IMG/VR virus record: IMGVR_UViG_3300028800_000001
Coordinates: 248,001 to 312,000 of that record
Strand: one strand, 5' to 3'
Length of the DNA: 64,000 nucleotides
Every line of letters starts with the position of its first letter. Position 1 is the stretch's first letter. Under the pieces are notes generated by a model that worked only from the letters and a program-made list of their open reading frames with translations, was not told where the DNA came from and did no database searches. The position numbers and the translations under genes were made by a program. Below, piece after piece: positions 27,483-38,485 of the stretch.

Positions 27483-28301
27483 TTAAAGCTTTACCGTAAA
27501 TGGAATGCCTGCGCTGTTCAGTGCCTTTTTTATAGGGGCTGTTGGTGCTTTCCCATGAAAGGTAACACTTTTGATATCGCTTGTTGAGACTCCACCATGC
27601 ACCTGTGCTTCCATATATTCATTTGCCAGATCACGTGGTCGCAAGGGATCAATACCGTTATAGAGTGGATAAATGCGACTATCAGGATGCGTCACTGGTT
27701 GTGGAATGACGCTTTCGTAGTGTCCACCAGAGGTCATTGCCAGTGAATCACCATAGGTCATAGTAGCACGATCTCGTGTTTCTGGCTTTAGTTCAACAGC
27801 TACGTTCCCATATTGAGAAACATCTGCATCAGTATTGTCTCCATGAGTATCTTTTGAGAGATATCCATAAATGGGACGGTTCTCCACCCCTGCTTTTGCT
27901 TCATCAAATCCAAAGGCACCAGATTCTAGTTTATCTCTTGAATCTTTGGCAACGCTTCCGCCACTCTTGTTTGTCTCGAATTGACTTTTGAAGCGACCGC
28001 CATCCAATATTTTTTGGAGTGCTGACGGTTTTACTCGTACAAAGAGTCCAGTATCTTTGACTGCATCTTGCGCTTGCTTATCAAGCGTTGCTTTGTAGGC
28101 ATCAGGTGAGAGACCATGACGCTCCCCAAAGATTTCGTAACGCAGATGGGTGTTGTCAGCAAACTCAGAGGCCCAGTGCTCTGTAGGATGTACTCCCAGG
28201 CTTTCTAGTGTCTTGCCGGAACCACCCTCAGAAATAAATTCACCATTTGCATCGCTATGCGCATGATTGTATTTCCTTTGGACTGCGTAGCGAAACCGCA
28301 T
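27483..28301 (-). CDS. KYN-tagged DUF3626-like protein
   Basis: Start moved to ATG 28301 (GGAG SD); RKYNHAHSDANGEF; GRFKSQFET, RPIYGYL, YMEAQVHGGV. Confidence 0.7.
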   Translation of the reverse strand: MRFRYAVQRKYNHAHSDANGEFISEGGSGKTLESLGVHPTEHWASEFADNTHLRYEIFGERHGLSPDAYKATLDKQAQDAVKDTGLFVRVKPSALQKILDGGRFKSQFETNKSGGSVAKDSRDKLESGAFGFDEAKAGVENRPIYGYLSKDTHGDNTDADVSQYGNVAVELKPETRDRATMTYGDSLAMTSGGHYESVIPQPVTHPDSRIYPLYNGIDPLRPRDLANEYMEAQVHGGVSTSDIKSVTFHGKAPTAPIKKALNSAGIPFTVKL

Positions 28302-28302
28302 A

Positions 28303-28515
28303 TTACTCTCCAACCTTCTTTGCCGTCTTGAGCCACTCATTGACTTTTTCTTGTACACCATCATAGGGCTCCCAGGCAGTTCCACGCGTGAGCATCGTGG
28401 CAATGGATTGTGGTGGATACAAGAGATGTTTCTCTTGATCATAAATCTGGCCCATTTTTTCATCTTCAGTCAGGATGAAGCGTACTCCATCATCAGAGAC
28501 AGCAAATATTTTCAT
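28303..28515 (-). CDS. small paralogous protein (putative immunity family) copy 4
   Basis: GQIYDQEKHLLYPPQSIATMLTRGTAWEPYDG...VNEWL. Confidence 0.65.
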   Translation of the reverse strand: MKIFAVSDDGVRFILTEDEKMGQIYDQEKHLLYPPQSIATMLTRGTAWEPYDGVQEKVNEWLKTAKKVGE

Positions 28516-28517
28516 GG

Positions 28518-29465
28518 CTATGATGCTCCTGCTACGCTATACGGAATATTTTCTCGTTGTAATAATTTAGTCAGCGCCGCGCTTGGTGCTTTACTATGAA
28601 AGACAACGTGTGCAATGTGACTTTTTGAGACACCGCCATGCATTTGTGTTTCGGTGTACACATCTTTGATGAGTGAGGTATTTCCTTCTGGACTGTTATA
28701 ATTGCTTGCTGCGGTCCCTGTTGGCTTGAGTACTGGATTAGGGAGCATTCGTGGTGCATCCTCACTTCCTCCTTCGTCAAGCGAATCGCCAAGTGTAAAC
28801 GTACTTTTTGCCCTCACTTCAGGTTTGAAGCGGATTGCCACATCACCGTAAGCTGAGGCAAAGTTTTGTTCGCCATTTGCACCATCACTTAAATACCCGT
28901 AAATTGGTCGATCTTCTGACTTGGTCTTTTGATCATAGCCAAACATCTGCTCTTCTTGTTCAGCTCGACTCTCAAGATAGTTGGTCAGTTTGATCTTATT
29001 GGCTCCAATAGCCGCGCCGGTCTTATTGGTTTCGAAGGCACTCTTAAAACGACCATCAGTAAGAATGCCTTGCAGTCCTTTGCTTGATGTTCGTGTCCAT
29101 AACTCTCCAGGCGTTACCAGGGCAACAATGTGTGCATCTTCGCGTGCTTTGAGTGCATCAGCCGTGATAGGTTTTCCTAAATCCGTCCATGAGTCAGCAA
29201 AGTTCTTGAGTCGCTGATTGTACGTAGCTTCAAAATTCTTTGTCCAGGCGGCACTCGGATGCACATTTTTCAGCACCGGATCAAGTTGATTGTCAGGATG
29301 CTTTGGCCCCAGCGTTCGCGTTCCATCACGTGCGACAGAGATATGAGCTTCGCCAGCCGTTGAGAACTGTCCCAAATGATTGTGATGTGGGTTATATTTT
29401 TGTGCCCAGGCATGTGCCAACATCCGCATCCGTTTCATACGATCATAGAGAAAAATGTCTTCCAT
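28518..29465 (-). CDS. KYN-tagged DUF3626-like protein
   Basis: QKYNPHHNHLGQFST; GRFKSAFET, RPIYGYL, YTETQMHGGV. Confidence 0.7.
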   Translation of the reverse strand: MEDIFLYDRMKRMRMLAHAWAQKYNPHHNHLGQFSTAGEAHISVARDGTRTLGPKHPDNQLDPVLKNVHPSAAWTKNFEATYNQRLKNFADSWTDLGKPITADALKAREDAHIVALVTPGELWTRTSSKGLQGILTDGRFKSAFETNKTGAAIGANKIKLTNYLESRAEQEEQMFGYDQKTKSEDRPIYGYLSDGANGEQNFASAYGDVAIRFKPEVRAKSTFTLGDSLDEGGSEDAPRMLPNPVLKPTGTAASNYNSPEGNTSLIKDVYTETQMHGGVSKSHIAHVVFHSKAPSAALTKLLQRENIPYSVAGAS

Positions 29466-29861: not shown

Positions 29862-30305
29862 CTATACTTTGTTGAGGGCTGTTGTGACTGCAATAGAAAC
29901 GCCAGCCGCCGCGCCAATAATAAGAAACGTTTGACCATAGGCTTTGAGGATTCCAAGGCTACTCACACGTGCTTGCGCAATGAGCACTCCAAGTGCACAG
30001 GTGATGAGCGCACATAAGAGCAACGCAAGTGGTTTGGGCGCAAAAGCAAAAGGTAACGAAGGGAGCAGTATGCCAATACAAGAAGCAACACCGATCACCA
30101 GGGCATACTTGACGGTGTTCACATTCGTCACATCAGAGAGATATGCCCCGCCTGTCATCGAAATACCAGAGGCCAGGGCCAATCCAACGGCTGAGAGTAC
30201 TAATGCATGTGTATCACCGATGATGTATCCGGCTGCAATCACGCCAAGAATGCAGGTCATCCCATCAAAACTACCAAAGATGGCCTTACTGACGATTTCC
30301 TTCAT
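29862..30305 (-). CDS. VIT1/CCC1-family membrane protein
   Basis: IFGSFDGMTCILGVIAAG, ASGISMTGGAYLS; 5 TM segments. Confidence 0.75.
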   Translation of the reverse strand: MKEIVSKAIFGSFDGMTCILGVIAAGYIIGDTHALVLSAVGLALASGISMTGGAYLSDVTNVNTVKYALVIGVASCIGILLPSLPFAFAPKPLALLLCALITCALGVLIAQARVSSLGILKAYGQTFLIIGAAAGVSIAVTTALNKV

Positions 30306-30681
30306 AATGCTGCTCCTTTAAGAGTTCTAGGATTTGGAGTTGTTGATGATTGATCTTCAGTAAAAGTGCATTTGTCTCATACATCTTTTCAACCTCTGCG
30401 GCTTCAATGGTGTCACGGGCACGATCTTTTCCAGCCTGTCTATTTTGACTCATGAGAATGAGCGGCGAGCTAAACGCTGCTTCTGCTGACATAAAGAGAT
30501 TGCACAGAGTAAAGGGGTAACTGTCCCAATGATAGAACCAACCAACACTGTTGAGTAAAAACCAGAGAAAGAGCAACGCTGCCTGAATCAAGATAAAGTT
30601 CCAATTACCTAACGCTTTGACCGCACCATCAGCCAGCCGATCACCCGCGTCATGCGGAAGATGTATATTCATACGCTTCAC
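30286..30681 (-). CDS. DUF1003 membrane protein
   Basis: GDRLAD...GNWNFI, WDSYPFTLCNLFMSAEAAFSSPLILMSQNRQ. Confidence 0.85.
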   Translation of the reverse strand: MKRMNIHLPHDAGDRLADGAVKALGNWNFILIQAALLFLWFLLNSVGWFYHWDSYPFTLCNLFMSAEAAFSSPLILMSQNRQAGKDRARDTIEAAEVEKMYETNALLLKINHQQLQILELLKEQHYEGNRQ

Positions 30682-31055
30682 GCATCTGCTCCAAATTCTG
30701 AGAGTGCTAACTTTGCTTCGTGTTCCTCCACCATGCGTTCAAGTTCTGCGGTCTCAATGCCATGTTCACGTAACATCTCAACCGCATACGTGACCAGAAA
30801 GAAGGCACTATCTAACAGCTTTTTGAGTTGCTCAAGATCATTGTCCATCAAGCGTTCCTCTCTTGACATGAATCCGAACTTTTGTGCATGTTCTGTTCCA
30901 TCTTCTCCACGCAACCAGGAAAGAAGAAGTCCAGAAAAATCCTTGACTTCTCCCAGCCCGTAGGGTGGATCAGTGACACACAAATCGATAGAGTTTGTCT
31001 GAAGGTGACGTAAGACTTCTAAGCAATCGCCATGAATGACCGTATCAAGCATCAT
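30678..31055 (-). pseudogene. truncated N6/N4 DNA methyltransferase N-terminus fused to an unrelated short ORF
   Basis: IHGDCLEVL...SIDLCVTDPPYG present, but no SAM-binding DPFxGxG motif; only 125 aa. Confidence 0.6.
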
Positions 31056-31921
31056 TTTGTCCTTCTGGTCTTTTTGGTGGGATCAAACCTTTCTCCGGTT
31101 AACTGGCGTTGCATGCGTTCTTCTTCGCGTTCTAAGCGAAAGCGCTGAATACGTTCTATCTCATCACGTGGTGGCAAACATTTCCACATCTGCTGCATAC
31201 TGTAGTACACAATAGAATAGCGAAACGAATCCTGTTCCAACTGTGTAATGGGCGTCACACCATGCAAAATGTTTTGGCCGTCAAACATGAGCAGCGAATT
31301 ATTACGCAGTTCAAAGCCCAGGCCGTATTCAGGCACCGCAAGATAGCCACCAAGCACGTTGCGTTTAAGCACAATCATGTTTGACCACACATCACGAAAG
31401 TTGCCTGCATCAAAGTGATAAGGGAGAGGATTATTTTTGTTCACGATGCCAGAGGTGAAGACGGATTCGTCAATCTTCCAATTTTCTAGCACTTTTTCGG
31501 TCATCTCCATGTGTTGTTGATAGAGCAGCGGCGCAAATTCTTGGTAGTAGTGCGCAACTTTGGCCGCATAACTCACAATGATGTCATGCTCATCAGGATG
31601 TTCTACATAACAACTCGTGGCAGTGCAGTAATCACGACGCAGCGTGTTGCGTGGCAAAAAGCCAACGGTGCGTGATTGAGCCATCATGCCACCTGTGCGT
31701 ATCTCCAGCTTGTAGTCAATCGTTTGCAGTGCTTTGATCAGCGCGCTGTTATCTTCTTGTAAGAGGAGATAGACAATCTTTGGCTCAGCATTCCCTGGCT
31801 CATAGATCACTGTTGGTTCGCTGATCAGCGTGTCATAGTCTTCGTCTTGCGCATGACGCAATTTGTACTGCGAAAGATCAAGTTGCTTTTTTGTTGCAAT
31901 CCTAGTGTAAAGATCTGCCAT
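31052..31921 (-). CDS. TET/JBP-family 2OG-Fe(II) dioxygenase, copy 1
   Basis: FTSGIVNKNNPLPYHFDAGN (HxD), GGYLAVPEY, LHGVTPI, RYSIVYY. Confidence 0.85.
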   Translation of the reverse strand: MADLYTRIATKKQLDLSQYKLRHAQDEDYDTLISEPTVIYEPGNAEPKIVYLLLQEDNSALIKALQTIDYKLEIRTGGMMAQSRTVGFLPRNTLRRDYCTATSCYVEHPDEHDIIVSYAAKVAHYYQEFAPLLYQQHMEMTEKVLENWKIDESVFTSGIVNKNNPLPYHFDAGNFRDVWSNMIVLKRNVLGGYLAVPEYGLGFELRNNSLLMFDGQNILHGVTPITQLEQDSFRYSIVYYSMQQMWKCLPPRDEIERIQRFRLEREEERMQRQLTGERFDPTKKTRRTK

Positions 31922-32735
31922 ACGCACCTTCCCTGTACGGGTTTTCCATCCCCAAATCAATGCCCTGCTCTTCTAAGTAGCGCGCCAAAAAGAATGCGAG
32001 CACATCTGGATTTGCTTTGATCTCTTCACGGGCGCGTACTTCGCGCAGGCCACTCACCATCCAGGCAAATTCGGAAGGGGAACAAATGAGCACAATTTGC
32101 CGAATAAGCCCATTTTCAAATTGCTCACGATTTTTGCTTGGAACACCTCGATAGACCGGTGGTGGAATATCTTCAACGACCCGTGGCAAATAGGGGGCCA
32201 GTGGTGCTTCTTCACCATCATCCTCGTCTTCTTGCTCTTCTGAAATCACAGAGAGATAGGAAGGTGTCACAGCAGGACGTACCATTTCAGGCAGCGCTTC
32301 AACAGTTTTTGGAATACTTGCGAGCAAGGTTTGCAACTCTTGTTCTGAAGAGCCCAGTGCATTCAGATCAAAACCGGCTTCATTTTGTTCACGAAGTAAT
32401 TGCAAAAACATCGTTTGGTCTACGTTTTGCTCATTATGAAGTCGGTTATCGGCCACTAGATAGGCTTCCACTTCACGCGGTGACCAGTTCTTCGGCAAAA
32501 TGTCGGCACGTAACTCATCCCACTGGAGATAGAGTGCCGCCTCGACCACACCATGACCGGCAACCAGCAAATAGCGCTCATCGTCTTGCTCCTGGCACAC
32601 AATAGAGCGTACCTGTCCGAAGCGCTTGAGACTGGCTGCAAGGCGCACAATATCCGCATTGGTATGGATTTTATAGTTTTTAGGATGTGCTCGCACTGCG
32701 GCAAGCGGAACAATCTTATTCGTTTTGAAGTGCAT
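31902..32735 (-). CDS. ParB N-terminal (ParBc/Srx) domain protein
   Basis: HPKNYKIH, SLKRFGQVRSIV, LVAGHG, LVADNRL. Confidence 0.85.
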   Translation of the reverse strand: MHFKTNKIVPLAAVRAHPKNYKIHTNADIVRLAASLKRFGQVRSIVCQEQDDERYLLVAGHGVVEAALYLQWDELRADILPKNWSPREVEAYLVADNRLHNEQNVDQTMFLQLLREQNEAGFDLNALGSSEQELQTLLASIPKTVEALPEMVRPAVTPSYLSVISEEQEDEDDGEEAPLAPYLPRVVEDIPPPVYRGVPSKNREQFENGLIRQIVLICSPSEFAWMVSGLREVRAREEIKANPDVLAFFLARYLEEQGIDLGMENPYREGAYGRSLH

Positions 32736-32758
32736 CTTCTCTTCCTCGGTGCGCAGTG

Positions 32759-32808
32759 AATTAATTATTTTTTCACGCTCTTCTCTTTTTTATTTTTTAA
32801 AAATAATT
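32759..32808. promoter_or_regulatory. paired AATTAATT motif (one mismatch)
   Basis: AATTAATT at 32759 and AAATAATT at 32801. Confidence 0.5.
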
Positions 32809-32810
32809 AT

Positions 32811-33008
32811 TTATTTCTTTTCGCATTTACACTGTTGGAAGAAGGGGAAGCGCAACTCAGACTGCGAAACAAAGCTATGAAATACCAGTGCCCCGCCACA
32901 GCGTGTACAGATCAGGGCACACCAACCATGTGCAACATAGAAGAGCCGATCCCCTTGATGATAAATTCTGACTTCGCTATGCTTTTCGGTCAGTTCTCGC
33001 ATACTCAT
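32811..33008 (-). CDS. small Cys-containing hypothetical protein
   Basis: ATGA overlap with upstream ParB; CTRC and CKC. Confidence 0.45.
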   Translation of the reverse strand: MSMRELTEKHSEVRIYHQGDRLFYVAHGWCALICTRCGGALVFHSFVSQSELRFPFFQQCKCEKK

Positions 33009-33601
33009 CCTAGCCTCGTGATATCCACCAATGATAAGAGGACACGAAAACGCTCTGTGTCATCGGGCGCAACAATATGGCGCATGAGCCGTTCATAGCG
33101 TTCTTTTATTTCTGGTGTAACACGCAAACGAATATACACTTCTTCTTTGGTTTCAAAAAAGATTTCCTGCTGTTCTAGCTTTGGCATACGGCTATTTTGT
33201 AACAGCTTTTGTAGCTCACCATCATCGTAGCCTACAGAGAAGAGGTCAAACCCTTGCTGCTCTTGCAAGAGGTCAAGGAGCGCTACTTCATCATCTTCTG
33301 CCAGTTGGCTCAGGCGATTATCTGCTACCATGATTGCATTGATTTCAGTCGGTGCAAGATCTGGTGGCAAAATATCGATGTGTACCTCCTGTGCCCCTTC
33401 AGCACGCATTGCCTCCACCATTCCGTGTCCAGCTACAATAAGGTAGGTATTGGGCGCGCCTTGCTGCACAACAATACTACGGAATTGTCCAAAACGCCGG
33501 TAACTGGCTTGTAAGTGTTTCATCTGTTTGGCTGGATGATGGCGATAATTGCCAGGGTGCGGATGTAGTTGCGTGAGGGCAACCCGTTTATTGGTGATCA
33601 T
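33005..33601 (-). CDS. ParB N-terminal domain protein with RHH-like C-terminus
   Basis: HPGNYRHH, SYRRFGQFRSIV, IVAGHG, MVADNRL; start moved to ATG 33601. Confidence 0.8.
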   Translation of the reverse strand: MITNKRVALTQLHPHPGNYRHHPAKQMKHLQASYRRFGQFRSIVVQQGAPNTYLIVAGHGMVEAMRAEGAQEVHIDILPPDLAPTEINAIMVADNRLSQLAEDDEVALLDLLQEQQGFDLFSVGYDDGELQKLLQNSRMPKLEQQEIFFETKEEVYIRLRVTPEIKERYERLMRHIVAPDDTERFRVLLSLVDITRLG

Positions 33602-34436
33602 GTTGCACCTTCTCAATGGTACTTTGTAATCGTTTTTCCTCACGCTCGGTACGCTTCTGGCGAATGCGTTGCATTTCTTGCCCAAGAGGCAAACATTTCC
33701 ACATACTTTGCAGTGAATAGTACACAATAGAGTAGCGATAGCCATCAGGGCGCGTTTGTGCAATAGGGGTTACCCCATGCAACAGGTTTTGTCCATCGAA
33801 CATGACCAGTGAATTATTTTTAACAGCAATGCCAAAGTTATATTCAGGAACCGACAAAAGACCACCACTGGTTCCTGCGCGAAAGACCAGCATATTTGAC
33901 CAGACGTGTTTGAAGTTTCCTGCATCAAAGTGATACGCCAGTGGGTTGTTTTTATTAATAATGCCAGAAGTAAAGACAGAGCGCTCAAGTGTCCAGTCTG
34001 GCAACACTTTTTCCACCTGCTGTTCGTGGTAACTATAGAGCTCTGGATTGTAGCGCTCGTAATAGGTTGCAACACGCTTTGCGTAGGACGTAATCAGGGC
34101 ATGCGCCTGCGCACTATCGCGAGCCAGAGAAGAAACGGTACAAAAATCATCACGAATGGTGATGCGTGGACGAAAACCAAAGATACGACTTCGCGTCTTC
34201 ATTCCACTGGTGCGCTCTTGCTCACGATACTCAATGCGCTTCAGGCAGTCAGTGATTGCACGACAATCATCATCGAGCTCTAGGTAGACAATAGAGACGC
34301 GTCCACTTTCTGCGTCGCGCACCACTGTAGACGTTTCAATGCGTTCTGCAAAGTCGGCTTCTGTGGCACTACGGAAGCGATAGGATTGCAAATCAATGAC
34401 ACCGCGTGTGCGTGTCATCACCTGTGGCTCTTGCAT
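33588..34436 (-). CDS. TET/JBP-family 2OG-Fe(II) dioxygenase, copy 2
   Basis: FTSGIINKNNPLAYHFDAGN, GGLLSVPEY, LHGVTPI, RYSIVYY. Confidence 0.85.
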   Translation of the reverse strand: MQEPQVMTRTRGVIDLQSYRFRSATEADFAERIETSTVVRDAESGRVSIVYLELDDDCRAITDCLKRIEYREQERTSGMKTRSRIFGFRPRITIRDDFCTVSSLARDSAQAHALITSYAKRVATYYERYNPELYSYHEQQVEKVLPDWTLERSVFTSGIINKNNPLAYHFDAGNFKHVWSNMLVFRAGTSGGLLSVPEYNFGIAVKNNSLVMFDGQNLLHGVTPIAQTRPDGYRYSIVYYSLQSMWKCLPLGQEMQRIRQKRTEREEKRLQSTIEKVQHDHQ

Positions 34437-35290
34437 TACGCCTCCACTGGCATTGGCTCAAGGGCATGTTCTTTGGCATAGAGCCGTAAGAACTCAGTAA
34501 AGACATCCGTATTGGTATCCAGTTGCCATTTTGCCCTGGCCTGTGAAAGGACATTCATCACCCAAATATATTCCTCTTGTGAATAAATCAGCACAATCTG
34601 GCGAATAGTTGTGGTGTTATAGGTATGTAAGAAGTCTTGTGGAGTGGTGCCAATAATTTGTTCGGGGGCCGCAAAGACGGTGGTTCCTTTTTCGTCAGAA
34701 GTGGCAACGGTTCCTGGTGCATACACAGGGCTATAAGGTGCTGGCGTAAAAAGTGGATTATGCGGGGCTGGAGGACCATCATCCTCTTCCTCAATATATT
34801 CTTGATTGACACGCATGGACTCACGAATAGCGCTTTGCGCTTCTTCTTGTCCACCAAAGGCCATTTCCTCTAGCATACGTGCCATATCTTGCTCAGAAGT
34901 TCCTAGCGACAAAAGGTCAGCACCAATGGTAGCTTGCTCACGGAGTAGCGCGAGTAACTTCTCTTGATCATCGTGGCCTGCGTCGCTGAGCTTATTGTCA
35001 GCAACCAGATAGCCAGAGACCATGCTGTCGTCCCAGGACGCAGGCAAGAGATCCGCACGTAGCTCTTGATAACCTAAACGGCGTGCCGCTTCGAAGACGC
35101 CATGACCAGCGACCAGCAAATAGGTACCATCAGGCTGTTCTTGACACACGATACTTCTGCCTTGTCCAAAGCGGGTGAGGCTAGAAGCAATATTGCGTAG
35201 TTGTGTTTCGGTATGGACACGATAATTCTTGGGATTTGGACGCACCGCAGAGAGGGCAATGCGATGGTTTTCTTTCAGCATTTCTATCAT
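34436..35290 (-). CDS. ParB N-terminal domain protein
   Basis: NPKNYRVH, SLTRFGQGRSIV, LVAGHG, LVADNKL; C-terminal IRQIVLI shared with 31902-32735. Confidence 0.85.
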   Translation of the reverse strand: MIEMLKENHRIALSAVRPNPKNYRVHTETQLRNIASSLTRFGQGRSIVCQEQPDGTYLLVAGHGVFEAARRLGYQELRADLLPASWDDSMVSGYLVADNKLSDAGHDDQEKLLALLREQATIGADLLSLGTSEQDMARMLEEMAFGGQEEAQSAIRESMRVNQEYIEEEDDGPPAPHNPLFTPAPYSPVYAPGTVATSDEKGTTVFAAPEQIIGTTPQDFLHTYNTTTIRQIVLIYSQEEYIWVMNVLSQARAKWQLDTNTDVFTEFLRLYAKEHALEPMPVEA

Positions 35291-35391
35291 AAAAACTCCT
35301 CAAAATGACAAAGCCAGAGATAAGTGGATGTTTTTCTCTACTGAAAATTTGAGGAATTTTGTATAGGAGGATTGCTGCTAGTATAGCATAC

Positions 35392-35952
35392 CTAAGAAAT
35401 AAACAAAAGAGAAAGAAGTGTTTCTACATTGCGCCGCAACTGTGTTGGAGTATCATTACGCAGGTGATAGCTTGGAATGGTGTGCTGATAGGCGAGAAAG
35501 ACGTTGTTGATTTGGGTCTGGATACCTTTCACCCAACTCTCACTCTGGTTCCCTCTGGCCTTTCTCCGCAGCAATGCGGCCTCGCTACACAGTTCCACGA
35601 GCGTCACTTTCCCAGGAAAATTGGTTGAGAATAATTCAATACAAGAGCGCGTAAAGATGCGGCTTCCTTCAGCCAGCAACGTGTACTCTTCGAAAAAAGG
35701 ATGCTGTAGCTTCTCGCACAGCGCTGGAATATCGCACAGCAGCGCGGTCGAGAGACGATCTGTCCCTGCAAAGACTTCGTTCTCTGCGTAGAGCCCAAGA
35801 AGAAGTACACGCGTCGAGGGATAGAGCTGCCCACGAACTGTACCACAACGAAACTGTGTACTGGCACAGGGGCCAAGGGCCGGAAGCAAACTGCGCACTG
35901 TGGTGGTTTTGCCAACTCCAGGCGCGCCGCCAAGAAAAACAAACGCTTTCAC
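35392..35952 (-). CDS. P-loop kinase, probable 5-hydroxymethyluracil DNA kinase
   Basis: GGAPGVGKTT, FAGTDRLS, EGSRI, RKARGNQSESWVKG; GTG start 35952 with GGAG SD. Confidence 0.75.
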   Translation of the reverse strand: MKAFVFLGGAPGVGKTTTVRSLLPALGPCASTQFRCGTVRGQLYPSTRVLLLGLYAENEVFAGTDRLSTALLCDIPALCEKLQHPFFEEYTLLAEGSRIFTRSCIELFSTNFPGKVTLVELCSEAALLRRKARGNQSESWVKGIQTQINNVFLAYQHTIPSYHLRNDTPTQLRRNVETLLSLLFIS

Positions 35953-36276
35953 AAAAAACTCCAAGAAGAAGATAGATGTTTGGTGTTTTTTGTGAAGATG
36001 AATATTTTTTTCTCTAACCCCTCTATAGGACCAGTCTTATACAAGAGTAATAACAATCTAAGAAGATATATTACTTCTCTCAGTCTTACTCATATACCAG
36101 TCTTTAGAAGAGTAAGTAAGTATAGTAATAACTATATATCTTCTATAGTATATAGTCTTTCTTTTTTTTCGGCGCTCTATAAGCTATATTCTCCAAAAAT
36201 CAGGACTTTATAAGAAAATCGAGACCAATTTTCACCAGTTTTGGGCGCATTTTCAAAACTCTCAGGAAAGTCGCAT

Positions 36277-36708
36277 CTAGTCCTCCCAACGTAATTTCCA
36301 AACGTTCATACGACTTTTCTTTCCTTGTACCGTGGCCGAAAGGACAAAGCCCTGCGCACGATAGAATTTGTTGGCGTCAATGGTTTCAATCGCTTTGAGA
36401 CTCACACAATGTTTTCCTGCCTGATGCGCGGCAAGAACGGTACGTGCTACCAGCATGTTTCCAATACCTTTGCGACGAGTATTTTGATCGACACAAAGAT
36501 AGGAAAGCGTGGTTTGTTCGTCACGACGATGGTGAAAGAGCACAAAGCCCACCAGTTTTTCTTCTTCCCAGGCCGTAATAAGACTTTCATGCTTTATTGC
36601 TTCAAAGTATTGTGGGTAGAGAATAAAGCCAAGCTCTTTTTTACTGGCAGAAGCAAGACGCGCAAGCAAAGGAACGTCTTCGTCACACGCGGGGCGTAGC
36701 GCAATCAT
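36277..36708 (-). CDS. GNAT acetyltransferase
   Basis: LCVDQNTRRKGIGNML, ANKFYRAQGF. Confidence 0.85.
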   Translation of the reverse strand: MIALRPACDEDVPLLARLASASKKELGFILYPQYFEAIKHESLITAWEEEKLVGFVLFHHRRDEQTTLSYLCVDQNTRRKGIGNMLVARTVLAAHQAGKHCVSLKAIETIDANKFYRAQGFVLSATVQGKKSRMNVWKLRWED

Positions 36709-37583
36709 ATGAGACTCCTCAATTGACTACAGAGCAGCGGTGCCATGCGTACTCCAGAGCCACCCATCGCAGGAGCATAATAGATGTCATCTTGTTTGTA
36801 GAGTTGTTTTTTGAGTGCCATTGCTGGCCTCCATCCTTCTATCAGGGGTTGCTCTTCTTCCGCAACCAGGACAAGATCACCGGTAAGCCGCGCAAAAAGT
36901 TCTTTCCAAAGCGCATACTTTGGCTCCATGCTGTAGCCTTTCAGTTTCTTTTGCGAGAGGGTAGAACTGCCTGCATAGTGATAGGGGGTATTCGGCACAA
37001 GATTGGCATAGGCAAACTGAAAACGATTCTCTCGTAAATAAAAGGTTGGCCGCGCTGGTGAGGCAATAAGCACTTCTTCAGAGACCAATAACTTTACTTT
37101 GCGTGACCAGCCCCATACATAGTGATCGGCAATGCGAAAGCCATGTGAAATGATCTGTTGTGCGCCAGTAGGCACATCGTCAGTGCGCCGTTCGGCAAAA
37201 AAGAGCCGACTTTGCTCAACAAAGCGCTGAACATTGAAGTGATAACTTGGATACGCACCAAGATAGAGAGGTCCGATATGGGTGAGAATATCATATTTGG
37301 CTCCATGTGGCGGATGTTTACTGGAAAACCAGAATGCGCCATTTTCACTCAGGCGTCCCAGGTGTGCCGTCCAGGGTGCGCCTCGCTGGTGCCACTTTGA
37401 CCAGCCATGGTAGGCTCGCATCTCTTCTGGCTCTCCGCTTGGATAGATGAGCCCTGTACTGGCTTTCCAGGCAACATGTTCCGCATCGATATCGTTCCAG
37501 GTAAATGCTTTTTTTGCGGCGAAGAGTTCCCAGGCAAAAAAGGCACCAAGAACGCCCATGCCATGTAAATGATAGTGTGTCAT
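36705..37583 (-). CDS. FAD-dependent oxidoreductase/lyase-like protein
   Basis: LHGMGVLG Rossmann motif, AWKASTGL, EGWRP, GGSGVRMAP. Confidence 0.7.
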   Translation of the reverse strand: MTHYHLHGMGVLGAFFAWELFAAKKAFTWNDIDAEHVAWKASTGLIYPSGEPEEMRAYHGWSKWHQRGAPWTAHLGRLSENGAFWFSSKHPPHGAKYDILTHIGPLYLGAYPSYHFNVQRFVEQSRLFFAERRTDDVPTGAQQIISHGFRIADHYVWGWSRKVKLLVSEEVLIASPARPTFYLRENRFQFAYANLVPNTPYHYAGSSTLSQKKLKGYSMEPKYALWKELFARLTGDLVLVAEEEQPLIEGWRPAMALKKQLYKQDDIYYAPAMGGSGVRMAPLLCSQLRSLI

Positions 37584-38485
37584 CGAAGAAGTAAGACTCC
37601 TGTCTTTTTATAGAGTGTTTTGCGCACGCGGTCTGGCCCATTCCAGCCATGCACTTCTCCCAGGTAGGCATCAGGGAACAACTCAGCGCGTAAACTAAAA
37701 AGTTCTTTAGCTTCTAGTGGAGAAAGCGTGTAAAGTTGCGCAAGCATTTGATCAATATCATGACCGATATAATAGCGTCCTTCATAGACGGCGTGAAAGT
37801 CACAGAGCATTGTTTCCAATTGTGCAATATGCAGCACGATATCATGTTTGTGTACACGGCGTAACAAATCTTCTCCTTGCTCGTCAAGTATGCGTACTGC
37901 CTGTGGGGTGTTACCAACAACGGTGGGATAAAAGAGAGCAAGTCCTTGTCGTGGGCCACTAGAAAACTCATTGCCCATATTGGGTGCAACGAGCGGATAG
38001 TGATGCACACTCATGAGTATTTCACAGGTCTTATATGCAGCCCAGCGGCCATTGCCCCAAAAGCGTTGCAGGCGATCTGTGAGCGTTTGCCAGTTTGCAT
38101 AGGGATCGCTACGGGACAATCCTTCTTGAAAAAAGGCCGTGAGACTTTCATAGGGGCGCGTGATTTCCTGCACAGAGAGCAGGTGCTTGCTGATAGTGCC
38201 GCCACGAAAGCCACGCCGTTCGGTCGCACAGGAGAGCCGCGCAAACTGCGCAGGCAGCGCACTGCGCACAGGAGTGTGAGGGTAGACGCGTGTTACAGAA
38301 CCAAGATGATAATAGCTGACGTAGAGTAGCGTATGCCAGAGCGCTTCTTCAGGAGTGAAGTGGCTGTAGAGTCGTTCAAGAAGTGGGTACACCGGATCAA
38401 CATCTTTGGTAAGCAACTGGGCATGACAAAAGGAAAGGAAATCTTGAAAAAGTTTATCTTCTGAAAAGAACATTGGATATTTCAC
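37580..38485 (-). CDS. amino acid:DNA transferase (aGPT-Pplase2 clade, HhH-glycosylase-like)
   Basis: DVDPVY, TERRGFRG, GNGRWAAYK, SSGPRQGL, LETMLCDF, YYIGHDID. Confidence 0.8.
   Translation of the reverse strand: MKYPMFFSEDKLFQDFLSFCHAQLLTKDVDPVYPLLERLYSHFTPEEALWHTLLYVSYYHLGSVTRVYPHTPVRSALPAQFARLSCATERRGFRGGTISKHLLSVQEITRPYESLTAFFQEGLSRSDPYANWQTLTDRLQRFWGNGRWAAYKTCEILMSVHHYPLVAPNMGNEFSSGPRQGLALFYPTVVGNTPQAVRILDEQGEDLLRRVHKHDIVLHIAQLETMLCDFHAVYEGRYYIGHDIDQMLAQLYTLSPLEAKELFSLRAELFPDAYLGEVHGWNGPDRVRKTLYKKTGVLLLR

What the first reader, a model, noticed from the sequence alone, without database searches (positions are those of the whole stretch)
31052..38485. Complete post-replicative thymidine hypermodification pathway initiated by TET/JBP
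One strand carries aGPT-Pplase2, flavoprotein, GNAT, P-loop kinase and two TET/JBP genes. In Pseudomonas phage PaMx11, kinase, glycyl transferase, flavin lyase and acetyltransferase convert DNA 5hmU to 5-acetylaminomethyl-U, with 5hmU supplied from the nucleotide pool. Here no dUMP hydroxymethylase is visible in the window, and dioxygenases could make 5hmU directly on DNA. Inference: T to 5hmU to phospho-5hmU to amino acid-T to aminomethyl-U to an acetylated base, possibly partial or site-specific.
Basis: partly seen in the sequence, partly recalled or inferred. Interest (0 to 1): 0.75.

Follow-up and report, generated by a model that had tools for sequence, protein, structure and literature searches.

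The report
Dioxygenase-started thymidine hypermodification cluster
A 327-kb soil jumbo phage carries a full gene set that probably turns thymine already in its DNA into an acetylated aminomethyl-uracil; this kind of dioxygenase-started pathway is published, so it is a good new example, not a new principle.

Summary
On the minus strand of 31052-38485 sit an amino acid:DNA transferase, a FAD amine oxidase, a GNAT, a P-loop kinase and two Tet/JBP dioxygenases.

ParB-like proteins are the published activators of one subclass of phage thymine dioxygenases (O'Toole et al., PNAS 2026).

- **No pool route:** the complete 327-kb genome has no thymidylate-synthase or ThyX homologue.
- **PaMx11 parallel:** the first four genes match PaMx11 gp46-49 in order and size, and three share its PHROG families.
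- **Source exclusivity:** of 23 viral records with this flavoprotein, the 8 with an adjacent dioxygenase have no thymidylate-synthase homologue. Eleven of the other 15 have one 2-4 kb away.
- **5mC source:** none of the 21 newly fetched records among these 23 has a C5-methyltransferase.

The idea was already predicted (Lee et al., NAR 2021) and its first step shown (2026). No product chemistry is shown here. This genome also has a C5-methyltransferase about 33 kb away, so some 5mC oxidation cannot be excluded.

Verdict: a new member of a known kind, of moderate interest.

The parts
37580..38485 (-). Amino acid:DNA transferase (AADT, aGPT-Pplase2), 301 aa. Predicted to displace the phosphate of 5-phosphomethyl-dU with an amino acid, probably glycine.
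   Evidence: PF18724 E 1.6e-13. phrog_6364 E 2e-29, the same PHROG as PaMx11 gp46. A profile of 6 homologues hits PDB 8z2m (PaMx11 glycinyltransferase) at E 3e-17 and 25qc at E 5e-20. Invariant C228 aligns with the catalytic Cys247.
36705..37583 (-). FAD-dependent amine oxidase/lyase, 292 aa. A functional analogue of PaMx11 gp47 (NGTO), predicted to cleave the aminoacyl-T to 5-aminomethyl-dU.
   Evidence: GxGxxG at residues 8-13. AF2 pLDDT 93. Foldseek: DAAO 4e-13, NGTO 8z2o 4e-10, TM 0.63. VIA: Z 23 to DAAO, 21 to glycine oxidase, 20 to MnmC. It lies close beside an AADT gene wherever one was detected: 19 of 22 newly fetched loci, mostly directly adjacent, otherwise within about 0.8 kb.
36277..36708 (-). 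GNAT N-acetyltransferase, 143 aa. Predicted to acetylate the unmasked primary amine.
   Evidence: PF13673, PF13508 and PF00583, E about 4e-12. The top PHROG, 1249, is the same as for PaMx11 gp48. 23% identity to gp48 over its full length. An iterated search from gp48 retrieves the 99%-identical copy in L008 at 6e-41.
35965..36276 (.). A 312-bp A+T-rich intergenic spacer between the GNAT and kinase genes. It holds three copies of AAGACTG(G/A) and may be an internal regulatory region.
   Evidence: Sequence read directly. The motif is not enriched elsewhere in the window. Promoter and terminator scans do not exceed the shuffled controls.
35392..35964 (-). P-loop kinase, 190 aa. Predicted 5-hmdU DNA kinase.
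   Evidence: Walker A motif GAPGVGKT. PF18751 E 1e-4, below the cut-off. phrog_800 E 1.4e-9, the same PHROG as PaMx11 gp49 and Gordonia phage CaiB gp4, which scores PF18751 at 8e-59.
34436..35290 (-). ParB-like protein a, 284 aa: N-terminal ParB nucleotide-binding domain, acidic/proline-rich linker and short C-terminal domain. Predicted activator of dioxygenase a.
   Evidence: phrog_620 E 2e-24; weak ParB_N hit. Alignment A2. Its stop overlaps the start of dioxygenase a.
33588..34436 (-). Tet/JBP 5-methylpyrimidine dioxygenase a, 282 aa.
   Evidence: PF12851 E 1e-11. HxD, distal His and Arg are invariant in alignment A4, and a 34-residue tail follows the conserved Cys. 51% identical to dioxygenase b.
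33005..33601 (-). ParB-like protein b, short form of about 198 aa: nucleotide-binding domain with no long linker and a truncated C-terminal domain.
   Evidence: phrog_620 E 3e-27. Alignment with the paralogues puts the likely start at the ATG at 33601, not the TTG at 33763 that overlaps dioxygenase a.
32811..33008 (-). 65-aa ORF of unknown function between ParB b and ParB c.
   Evidence: No Pfam or PHROG hit. Found only in the 99%-identical contig L008.
31902..32735 (-). ParB-like protein c, 277 aa. Predicted activator of dioxygenase b.
   Evidence: phrog_620 E 2e-22. 44% identical to ParB a.
31052..31960 (-). Tet/JBP 5-methylpyrimidine dioxygenase b, 302 aa.
   Evidence: PF12851 E 2.8e-16. 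Catalytic residues H182, D184, H233 and R247 are invariant, and a 41-residue tail follows C261.
30678..31055 (-). 125-aa remnant of an N6/N4 DNA methyltransferase gene. A sibling strain has the intact 410-aa gene.
   Evidence: L008 is 99.8% identical from window 38961 to 30867. It then carries about 1,018 bp that the window lacks, and the alignment resumes at 30873. L008:9520-10752 scores PF01555 at 2e-29.

Best explanation
This is a post-replicative thymidine hypermodification island in a rhizosphere jumbo phage. The steps are inferred by homology and gene context unless marked otherwise.

1. Two paralogous Fe(II)/2-oxoglutarate Tet/JBP dioxygenases, each encoded directly after a ParB-like activator, hydroxylate thymine in double-stranded phage DNA to 5-hydroxymethyluracil. 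This is probably restricted to certain sequence contexts and therefore partial.
2. The P-loop kinase phosphorylates 5hmU to 5-phosphomethyl-dU.
3. The amino acid:DNA transferase replaces the phosphate with an amino acid through covalent catalysis by its conserved Cys. Glycine is the most likely amino acid.
4. The DAAO/glycine-oxidase-fold flavoprotein oxidatively cleaves the adduct to 5-aminomethyl-dU.
5. The GNAT acetylates the amine, giving 5-acetylaminomethyl-dU.

The dioxygenase-ParB modules take the place that a dUMP hydroxymethylase holds in PaMx11-type phages. The likely role is protection of phage DNA from host nucleases.

Shown directly here: gene content, conserved catalytic residues, the flavoprotein fold, absence of thymidylate-synthase homologues from the complete genome, and the comparative pattern. 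Not shown: any chemistry.
For: **Families and residues**
- Both dioxygenases have an intact HxD...H...R set and a C-terminal tail beyond the last conserved Cys. That tail is the published feature of ParB-dependent enzymes (PMC13229309).
- The AADT profile hits the PaMx11 glycinyltransferase structure at E 3e-17, with the catalytic Cys conserved.
- The flavoprotein fold is supported.

**Synteny with PaMx11**
- PaMx11 gp46-49 are AADT, FAD enzyme, acetyltransferase and kinase, at 292, 286, 140 and 189 aa.
- The window has the same order at 301, 292, 143 and 190 aa.
- PHROGs 6364, 1249 and 800 are shared.

**No pool route**
- There is no PF00303 or PF02511 match in the complete genome.

**Comparative pattern**
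- Of 23 IMG/VR records with this flavoprotein, the 8 with an adjacent dioxygenase have no thymidylate-synthase homologue. Four of these are rated complete.
- Eleven of the other 15 have one 2-4 kb away. Fisher p is 0.0013, but the records are not independent.
- None of the 21 newly fetched records has a C5-methyltransferase.
- Mosaics exist. PaMx11-like clusters (gp46, gp49, gp50 and gp51 homologues) carry this flavoprotein type. Dioxygenase clusters carry the true gp47 type (L041, L045). L038 has ParB, dioxygenase, GNAT, AADT, flavoprotein and kinase.
- 77 of the 80 nearest dioxygenase homologues have an adjacent ParB gene.

**Literature**
- ParB-dependent phage enzymes oxidise T in vivo and in vitro and are 'consistently linked' with kinases and AADTs (PMC13229309).
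- The PaMx11 chemistry has been reconstituted (PMC8989533).
- The substitution of Tet/JBP for the hydroxymethylase has been predicted.
Against: - No nucleoside data exist for this uncultured phage.
- The genome carries a C5-cytosine methyltransferase about 33 kb away, and characterised phage thymine dioxygenases also oxidise 5mC in vitro (PMC13229309 abstract).
- Three of the 80 nearest dioxygenase homologues sit beside a C5-methyltransferase (L009/L040, L066, L068). These include L009, the closest non-self relative of dioxygenase b at 54% identity.
- The flavoprotein is not a sequence-level member of the gp47 family. It has no phrog_16743 or PF01266 hit, and hhalign aligns only 36 N-terminal residues.
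- The kinase scores below the Pfam cut-off and shows no significant pairwise similarity to gp49.
- Amino-acid specificity cannot be read from the sequence.
- GNAT substrates are notoriously hard to predict.
Confidence: 0.7

Rival explanations
1. The route and logic are the same but the end product differs. The transferase installs an amino acid other than glycine, or the GNAT acylates something else or with a different acyl group. The final base would then not be 5-acetylaminomethyl-dU.
For: - AADT clade members use glycine, serine and other donors (PMC8989533 table).
- The window AADT is only 22% identical to PaMx11 gp46.
- The flavoprotein is a different sequence family from gp47.
- Related clusters drop the GNAT (L004, L010, L011, Gordonia phages) or the flavoprotein (L100, L012), so end products clearly vary between relatives.
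Against: - The four-gene order and sizes match PaMx11.
- The flavoprotein's nearest folds are glycine, D-amino-acid and sarcosine oxidases and MnmC, which cleaves the analogous carboxymethylaminomethyl-U.
- The GNAT shares its top PHROG with gp48, and an iterated search from gp48 retrieves it.
Confidence: 0.2
2. The substrates are split. One dioxygenase/ParB pair works on T. The other works on 5mC written by the phage's own C5-methyltransferase, giving 5hmC, possibly further modified, in addition to modified T.
For: - A C5-methyltransferase is present in the same genome.
- The two dioxygenases are only 51% identical and are most divergent in the N-terminal half, at 27-40% identity.
- The closest non-self relative of dioxygenase b, in L009, lies in a ParB-dioxygenase-ParB-C5-methyltransferase row with no kinase or AADT.
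- Characterised relatives oxidise both T and 5mC in vitro.
Against: - The methyltransferase is 33 kb away and only 30% identical to the one in L009.
- The tree does not resolve a separate 5mC-linked clade.
- An independent duplication with the same ParB-dioxygenase-ParB-ParB-dioxygenase layout occurs in L080, and no C5-methyltransferase was detected on that 10.5-kb contig.
- None of the 21 newly fetched flavoprotein-bearing relatives has a C5-methyltransferase.
Confidence: 0.1
3. The pathway is cytosine-only. The dioxygenases oxidise only 5mC, as do the clade A/B phage TETs of Burke et al. 2021, and the downstream enzymes act on 5hmC.
For: A C5-methyltransferase is in the genome. Phage TETs that act on 5mC are established (PMC8256090).
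Against: - There is no adjacent methyltransferase.
- ParB association is the mark of the thymine-dioxygenase subclass.
- The same AADT-flavoprotein pair is fed by a dUMP hydroxymethylase homologue in 11 relatives, so those enzymes act on uracil derivatives.
- Complete relatives with dioxygenase, AADT, flavoprotein and kinase have no C5-methyltransferase at all.
Confidence: 0.04
4. The result is a sparse mark rather than bulk protection. Only a small, sequence-defined subset of T is converted, and it serves a regulatory or packaging role rather than anti-restriction.
For: - Published enzymes have NTC or NTG preferences and modify 1-35% of T.
- Those authors raise an epigenetic-like role themselves.
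- Terminases often neighbour such clusters.
Against: - Two diverged dioxygenase/ParB pairs suggest selection for broader coverage.
- A five-enzyme elaboration of the base is typical of anti-nuclease hypermodification (PMC8989533).
- This rival concerns extent and role, not chemistry, so it is compatible with the best explanation.
Confidence: 0.2

Closest known systems
ParB-dependent phage thymine dioxygenases (5mYOX clade C1; e.g. 5mYOX176/ParB176; O'Toole et al., PNAS 2026, PMC13229309)
   Same: - Tet/JBP domain with an intact Fe/2OG triad.
- A ParB-like gene directly upstream, made of a nucleotide-binding domain and a C-terminal domain with no obvious DNA-binding domain.
- A C-terminal tail beyond the last conserved Cys.
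- No adjacent C5-methyltransferase.
- Neighbouring P-loop kinase, AADT and GNAT genes.
   Different: - Here there are two diverged dioxygenases and three ParB paralogues in one row, one of them a short form. The paper does not mention duplications or paralogues.
- Direct sequence comparison with 5mYOX176 was not possible, because no sequences were held.
- Activity and ParB dependence were not tested.
Pseudomonas phage PaMx11 gp46-gp49 pathway to 5-acetylaminomethyl-dU (Lee et al., NAR 2021, PMC8989533; structures in PMC11472151)
   Same: - Same four enzyme types, in the same order and with near-identical sizes.
- The AADT keeps the catalytic Cys.
- PHROGs are shared for the AADT, acetyltransferase and kinase.
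- The flavoprotein has the same GR2/DAAO fold and about the same compact size as gp47.
   Different: - The 5hmU source differs. PaMx11 uses a thymidylate-synthase homologue (gp51) with gp50 before replication. This phage has neither and uses dioxygenase/ParB modules after replication.
- The flavoprotein belongs to a different sequence family from gp47.
- Sequence identities are low, at 22-23% where alignable.
Metavirome clusters combining Tet/JBP with thymidine-hypermodification genes (Lee et al. 2021, Figure 2 sequences 22-25)
   Different: I could not check whether any of those four contigs has the flavoprotein and GNAT, or a duplicated dioxygenase. No accession list was held.
Cultured actinobacteriophages, e.g. 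Gordonia phage CaiB gp1-gp5 (ON108644) and relatives; Mycobacterium phages Phelemich and Reprobate
   Same: CaiB has ParB-like, Tet/JBP, AADT, P-loop kinase and this flavoprotein type as its first five genes.
   Different: There is no GNAT and only a single dioxygenase/ParB pair. Identities are 28-39%. Their DNA chemistry is, as far as I found, unreported.
MnmC FAD domain (tRNA cmnm5s2U to nm5s2U)
   Same: The fold matches at VIA Z 20, and the predicted chemistry is the same: oxidative removal of a carboxymethyl group from an aminomethyl-uracil.
   Different: It acts on an RNA substrate, is fused to a methyltransferase domain, and shows no detectable sequence similarity.

Membership tests
ParB-dependent phage thymine dioxygenase (5mYOX clade C1) | Tet_JBP domain with the HxD...H iron ligands and the 2OG-binding Arg | tested here: met
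   PF12851 scores above the cut-off for both genes. H182, D184, H233 and R247 are invariant in alignment A4.
ParB-dependent phage thymine dioxygenase (5mYOX clade C1) | A co-located ParB-like gene with a nucleotide-binding domain and a C-terminal domain but no DNA-binding domain | tested here: met
   Three ParB-like genes are present, two of them directly upstream of a dioxygenase. 77 of the 80 nearest homologues have an adjacent ParB. Domain layout was judged from the alignment only.
ParB-dependent phage thymine dioxygenase (5mYOX clade C1) | C-terminal extension beyond the last residue conserved in both subclasses (a Cys) | tested here: met
   34 and 41 residues follow the invariant Cys, including a conserved RTERE motif. 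The feature is described in PMC13229309.
ParB-dependent phage thymine dioxygenase (5mYOX clade C1) | No immediately neighbouring C5-methyltransferase | tested here: met
   The nearest PF00145 gene is about 33 kb away.
ParB-dependent phage thymine dioxygenase (5mYOX clade C1) | Oxidises T to 5hmU on dsDNA only when ParB is present | not testable with these tools
   This needs co-expression and UHPLC. The complex prediction for dioxygenase a with ParB a gave no verdict.
Amino acid:DNA transferase (AADT, aGPT-Pplase2, PF18724) | Family profile match and the catalytic Cys equivalent to PaMx11 gp46 Cys247 | tested here: met
   PF18724 scores 51 bits against a cut-off of 26. The profile hits 8z2m at E 3e-17, and invariant C228 aligns in the ET(I/L)LC motif.
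Amino acid:DNA transferase (AADT, aGPT-Pplase2, PF18724) | Glycine as donor | not testable with these tools
   Inferred only from the adjacent glycine-oxidase-like flavoprotein.
N-alpha-GlyT oxidase/lyase (PaMx11 gp47, NGTO) | Two-domain GR2/DAAO FAD fold of compact size (about 285 aa) | tested here: met
   AF2 pLDDT 93. Foldseek to 8z2o gives E 4e-10 and TM 0.63-0.64. VIA gives Z 23 to DAAO.
N-alpha-GlyT oxidase/lyase (PaMx11 gp47, NGTO) | Sequence-family membership (phrog_16743, PF01266) | tested here: not met
   There is no Pfam or PHROG hit. hhalign aligns only 36 N-terminal residues, probability 39%. The profile search of the PDB does not find 8z2o. I therefore treat it as an analogue, not a member.
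N-alpha-GlyT oxidase/lyase (PaMx11 gp47, NGTO) | Encoded next to an AADT in 5hmU-fed clusters | tested here: met
   It lies close beside an AADT wherever one was detected: 19 of 22 newly fetched loci, mostly directly adjacent, otherwise within about 0.8 kb. It occupies the gp47 position in clusters with gp46, gp49, gp50 and gp51 homologues.
5-hmdU DNA kinase (5-HMUDK, P-loop kinase) | Walker A P-loop and a family profile match | tested here: inconclusive
   The Walker A motif is present. PF18751 scores 22.4 bits against a cut-off of 27. phrog_800 E 1.4e-9 is shared with PaMx11 gp49. Pairwise BLAST to gp49 is not significant.
5-NmdU N-acetyltransferase (PaMx11 gp48) | GNAT fold, related to gp48, placed after the flavoprotein gene | tested here: met
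   GNAT Pfam hits. The top PHROG, 1249, is shared. 23% identity over the full length, E 2e-4. The position is the same as in PaMx11. The substrate was not tested.
Pre-replicative 5hmdU route (dUMP hydroxymethylase) | A thymidylate-synthase-fold gene in the genome | tested here: not met
   No PF00303 or PF02511 match in the complete 327-kb record. The positive controls ring.

The most novel reading that the evidence does not exclude
The two diverged dioxygenase/ParB pairs, plus the third short ParB, are not redundant. They would have different target specificities. One possibility is different sequence contexts, which together raise the share of T modified. The other is one pair for T and one for 5mC written by the phage's own C5-methyltransferase. 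In the second case a single kinase, transferase, oxidase and acetyltransferase line would hypermodify both pyrimidines.
Probability: 0.1. Interest if true: 0.75.

Novelty: new member of a known kind. Interest (0 to 1): 0.42.

Why it matters
Replacing the nucleotide-pool route with a DNA-level dioxygenase lets a phage hypermodify thymine without rebuilding its dNTP metabolism. It also lets the modification be sequence-selective.

This locus is one of the most complete candidate examples. It has source, kinase, transferase, oxidase and acetyltransferase in one row, in a complete genome that provably lacks the alternative source.

The comparative pattern found here is direct genomic evidence that the two sources are interchangeable modules. 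Dioxygenase/ParB or thymidylate-synthase homologue, but never both, sits beside the same transferase-flavoprotein pair.

The analysis also does three practical things:

- It defines a second flavoprotein family, invisible to Pfam and PHROGs, that stands in for PaMx11 gp47.
- It points to cultured Gordonia, Mycobacterium and Rhodococcus phages that carry the core module, where the chemistry can be measured.
- It shows that tandem duplication of the dioxygenase/ParB module arose at least twice, which gives a handle on how sequence coverage is tuned.

Tried and rejected
- **Near-identity DNA search:** megablast of the cluster against 50,697 phage records found nothing.
- **PDB by sequence:** single-sequence searches for the flavoprotein and kinase gave nothing useful. 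The flavoprotein profile found only N-terminal Rossmann matches.
- **Complex prediction:** dioxygenase a with ParB a scored 0.13 against a mark of 0.34, which is no verdict. I do not use it for or against binding.
- **Trees:** the dioxygenase and ParB trees were too poorly resolved to date the duplication or to test co-divergence of the pairs. Pairwise identities were used instead.
- **Promoters and terminators:** the scan did not exceed shuffled controls, so no operon boundaries are claimed.
- **Intergenic motif:** AAGACTGG is not enriched in the window.
- **Published sequences:** the supplements held for the 2025 preprint contain no contig identifiers matching my loci, and none are held for the 2026 and 2021 papers. 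I therefore could not place the window's enzymes in the published clades by direct comparison.
- **Reads:** I did not lay reads on the window. The available runs are kept as assembled contigs and cannot show base modification.
- **Iron supply:** I considered that the downstream VIT1-like membrane protein supplies iron to the dioxygenases. It is not conserved beside the cluster in other lineages, so I dropped this as unsupported.

Full report
**Where the window lies.** The window is bases 248001-312000 of a 327,295-bp IMG/VR virus record. The record has direct terminal repeats and is rated 100% complete. Near-identical sequence occurs in at least nine rhizosphere metagenome runs, so the phage is real and recurrent. 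An 11-kb contig, L008, is 99.8% identical across the cluster.

**Observation.** The minus strand of 31052-38485 carries a tight row of ORFs. In order of transcription they are:

| Coordinates | Gene | Evidence |
|---|---|---|
| 37580-38485 | Amino acid:DNA transferase | PF18724, E 1.6e-13 |
| 36705-37583 | 292-aa ORF, no Pfam or PHROG hit | |
| 36277-36708 | GNAT | |
| 35965-36276 | A+T-rich gap, 312 bp | |
| 35392-35964 | P-loop kinase | PF18751 below cut-off; phrog_800 |
| 34436-35290 | ParB-like a | |
| 33588-34436 | Tet_JBP a | |
| 33005-33601 | ParB-like b | |
| 32811-33008 | 65-aa ORF | |
| 31902-32735 | ParB-like c | |
| 31052-31960 | Tet_JBP b | |

**The 'flavoprotein'.**
- The unannotated 292-aa protein starts with a GxGxxG motif.
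- Fourteen homologues were found. Two of them carry a precomputed PF01266 (DAO) hit.
- An AF2 model built on their alignment has pLDDT 93 and pTM 0.91.
- Foldseek against the PDB is led by D-amino-acid oxidases (E 4e-13), followed by glycine and sarcosine oxidases. PaMx11 gp47/NGTO (8z2o, 284 aa) comes at E 4e-10 with TM 0.63-0.64.
- VIA-align gives Z 23 to DAAO, about 21 to glycine oxidase and 20 to the FAD domain of MnmC.
- At sequence level it is not in the gp47 family. gp47 hits PF01266 and phrog_16743 and this protein hits neither. hhalign aligns only the first 36 residues.
- I therefore call it a flavin amine oxidase with the fold and genomic position of NGTO, not a member of that family.

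**The other downstream enzymes.**
- A profile of six AADT homologues hits the PaMx11 glycinyltransferase structure 8z2m at E 3e-17 and a second AADT structure, 25qc, at E 5e-20. The catalytic Cys (Cys247 of gp46; PMC11472151) aligns with invariant C228.
- PaMx11 (NC_028770) encodes gp46 AADT, gp47 FAD enzyme, gp48 acetyltransferase and gp49 kinase in that order, at 292, 286, 140 and 189 aa. gp50 and gp51, a thymidylate-synthase homologue, follow.
- The window has the same order with 301, 292, 143 and 190 aa.
- The AADT, GNAT and kinase share their best PHROG with gp46, gp48 and gp49: phrog_6364, phrog_1249 and phrog_800.
- Pairwise identities are low: 22% for the AADT, 23% for the GNAT, and not significant for the kinase.

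**The dioxygenases and ParB proteins.**
- The two Tet/JBP proteins are 51% identical. Identity is 60-80% in the catalytic half and 27-40% in the N-terminal half.
- In an alignment of ten relatives the HxD, distal His and Arg are invariant. A 34-41-residue tail with a conserved RTERE motif follows the last invariant Cys.
- O'Toole et al. (PMC13229309) describe a C-terminal extension as exclusive to ParB-dependent phage thymine dioxygenases. They describe the partner as a ParB homologue with a nucleotide-binding domain and a C-terminal domain but no DNA-binding domain.
- The three ParB paralogues here are 37-44% identical. Two have a long acidic/proline-rich linker and a C-terminal domain. The middle one is short.
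- IMG/VR holds 527 relatives of the dioxygenase. Among the 80 closest (42-54% identity), 77 have an adjacent ParB gene, 13 a kinase, 9 an AADT and 3 a C5-methyltransferase.
- One contig, L080, has kinase-ParB-dioxygenase-ParB-ParB-dioxygenase. Its two dioxygenases are 61% identical to each other and 39-48% to the window's, so that duplication is independent.

**T or 5mC?** The complete genome has no thymidylate-synthase (PF00303) or ThyX (PF02511) homologue, while the controls ring. A pre-replicative 5hmdU route is therefore unlikely.

The genome does hold one C5-cytosine methyltransferase, at genome 245560-246903, about 33 kb from the cluster.

The comparative data favour T. I collected 23 IMG/VR records that encode this flavoprotein type.
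- In 19 of the 22 newly fetched loci a detectable AADT gene lies close beside it, mostly directly adjacent and otherwise within about 0.8 kb.
- Eight records have a dioxygenase adjacent to the module, and none of them has a PF00303 hit. These are the window's own genome and G003, G006, G007, G008, G016, G024 and G026. Four are rated complete.
- Of the other 15, 11 have a thymidylate-synthase homologue 2-4 kb from the flavoprotein. The four without one are fragments.
- Fisher's exact p is 0.0013, but related records are not independent.
- Two of those 15 records (G022, G023) have a weak, distant Tet_JBP-like hit of 17.8 bits tens of kilobases from the module. I regard it as another dioxygenase.
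- None of the 21 newly fetched records has a C5-methyltransferase.

Iterated searches from the PaMx11 proteins show a mosaic:
- L021, L027 and L037 have gp46-, gp49-, gp50- and gp51-like genes with this flavoprotein type.
- L041 and L045 have ParB-ParB-dioxygenase-AADT with a true gp47-type flavoprotein (PF01266 8e-25) and a kinase.
- L038 has ParB-dioxygenase-GNAT-AADT-flavoprotein-kinase.
- L100 has ParB-dioxygenase-GNAT-AADT-kinase.

So the same downstream enzymes are fed either by a dUMP hydroxymethylase homologue or by a dioxygenase/ParB module. This argues that they act on uracil derivatives and that the dioxygenases supply 5hmU.

The counter-evidence is limited.
- L009 carries the closest non-self relative of dioxygenase b (54% identity). 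It has ParB-dioxygenase-ParB-C5-methyltransferase and no kinase or AADT.
- L066 and L068 are similar.
- Characterised phage thymine dioxygenases also oxidise 5mC in vitro.

**Comparison with the literature.**
- Lee et al. (PMC8989533) reconstituted the PaMx11 route from 5hmU to 5-acetylaminomethyl-dU.
[quoted passage not shown] The authors inferred in-situ formation of 5hmU.
- O'Toole et al. showed thymine oxidation by phage enzymes, ParB dependence and sequence preferences (NTC, NTG). They state that the ParB-dependent subclass is consistently linked with kinases and AADTs.
- Their genome-mining table lists kinase, AADT and GNAT co-occurrence but no flavoprotein. Their text mentions neither FAD enzymes nor duplications.

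What this locus adds is:
- a complete PaMx11-type line behind a dioxygenase source;
- a doubled dioxygenase/ParB module with a third, short ParB;
- a flavoprotein family that the standard profile libraries do not recognise.

**Cultured relatives.** tblastn finds the flavoprotein, AADT and dioxygenase in Gordonia phages (CaiB, CloverMinnie, LittleMunchkin and others), Rhodococcus phage Tonitrus, and Mycobacterium and Microbacterium phages. In CaiB the first five genes are ParB-like, dioxygenase, AADT, kinase (PF18751 8e-59) and this flavoprotein, followed by the terminase. These isolates allow a direct chemical test.

**Verdict.**
- My confidence that this is a dioxygenase-initiated thymidine hypermodification pathway is about 0.7.
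- My confidence that the end product is exactly 5-acetylaminomethyl-dU is lower, about 0.4-0.5.
- The finding is a new member of a known kind, with some variant features.

Noticed in passing
window 30678-31055, against L008:9520-10922: The 125-aa ORF just downstream of dioxygenase b is the remnant of a 410-aa N6/N4 DNA methyltransferase (PF01555, 2e-29). That gene is intact in the 99.8%-identical contig L008. The window lacks about 1,018 bp, with the junction at 30867-30873. Sibling strains therefore differ in a second DNA-modification gene beside the cluster.
   Followed up: partly
G000:C1:245560-246903 (L001:1306-2649), about 1.1 kb before the window start: This is the only C5-cytosine DNA methyltransferase of the genome: 447 aa, PF00145 8e-64. 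Its neighbours have no informative Pfam hits. It is 30% identical to the methyltransferase that sits beside ParB-dioxygenase-ParB in L009.
   Followed up: partly
L080:815-5157: A 10.5-kb viral contig has kinase-ParB-dioxygenase-ParB-ParB-dioxygenase, the same doubled layout as the window. Its two dioxygenases are 61% identical to each other and 39-48% to the window's, so the duplication arose independently.
   Followed up: partly
L009:3549-7312; also L066 and L068: ParB-dioxygenase-ParB is followed directly by a C5-methyltransferase (PF00145, 1e-70), with no kinase or AADT. L009 also carries an integrase. These may be ParB-associated dioxygenases that work on 5mC.
   Followed up: partly
window 29862-30681: A small VIT1-like (iron transporter family, PF01988) ORF and a DUF1003 membrane protein follow on the same strand just downstream of the cluster. 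A link to iron supply for the dioxygenases is speculative, and the pair is not conserved beside the cluster in other lineages.
   Followed up: partly
window 27483-29465: Two tandem paralogous DUF3626 genes of 326 and 315 aa lie on the same strand. One related dioxygenase contig (L046) also has a DUF3626 homologue upstream of its ParB-dioxygenase pair.
   Followed up: no
window 41279-43855: An 858-aa ResIII/DEAD helicase on the plus strand is interrupted by an intein (PT-HINT and Intein_splicing hits between residues about 134 and 427).
   Followed up: no
window 35965-36276: The A+T-rich 312-bp spacer between the GNAT and kinase genes has three copies of AAGACTG(G/A) within 75 bp. The motif is not enriched elsewhere in the window.
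   Followed up: partly
L016 (Gordonia phage CaiB, ON108644, 1-3926) and relatives: Cultured actinobacteriophages carry ParB-dioxygenase-AADT-kinase-flavoprotein as their first five genes, next to the terminase. The annotations are mostly 'oxidoreductase', 'adenylate kinase' and 'hypothetical protein'. In RefSeq mycobacteriophage records the dioxygenase is often mislabelled 'queuine tRNA-ribosyltransferase'.
   Followed up: partly
G022:C1:79220-79444 and G023:C1:83067-83291: A weak Tet_JBP-like hit (17.8 bits, 221-aa frame) lies far from the AADT-flavoprotein module in two large records. One of them also has a thymidylate-synthase homologue with internal TAA stops.
   Followed up: no
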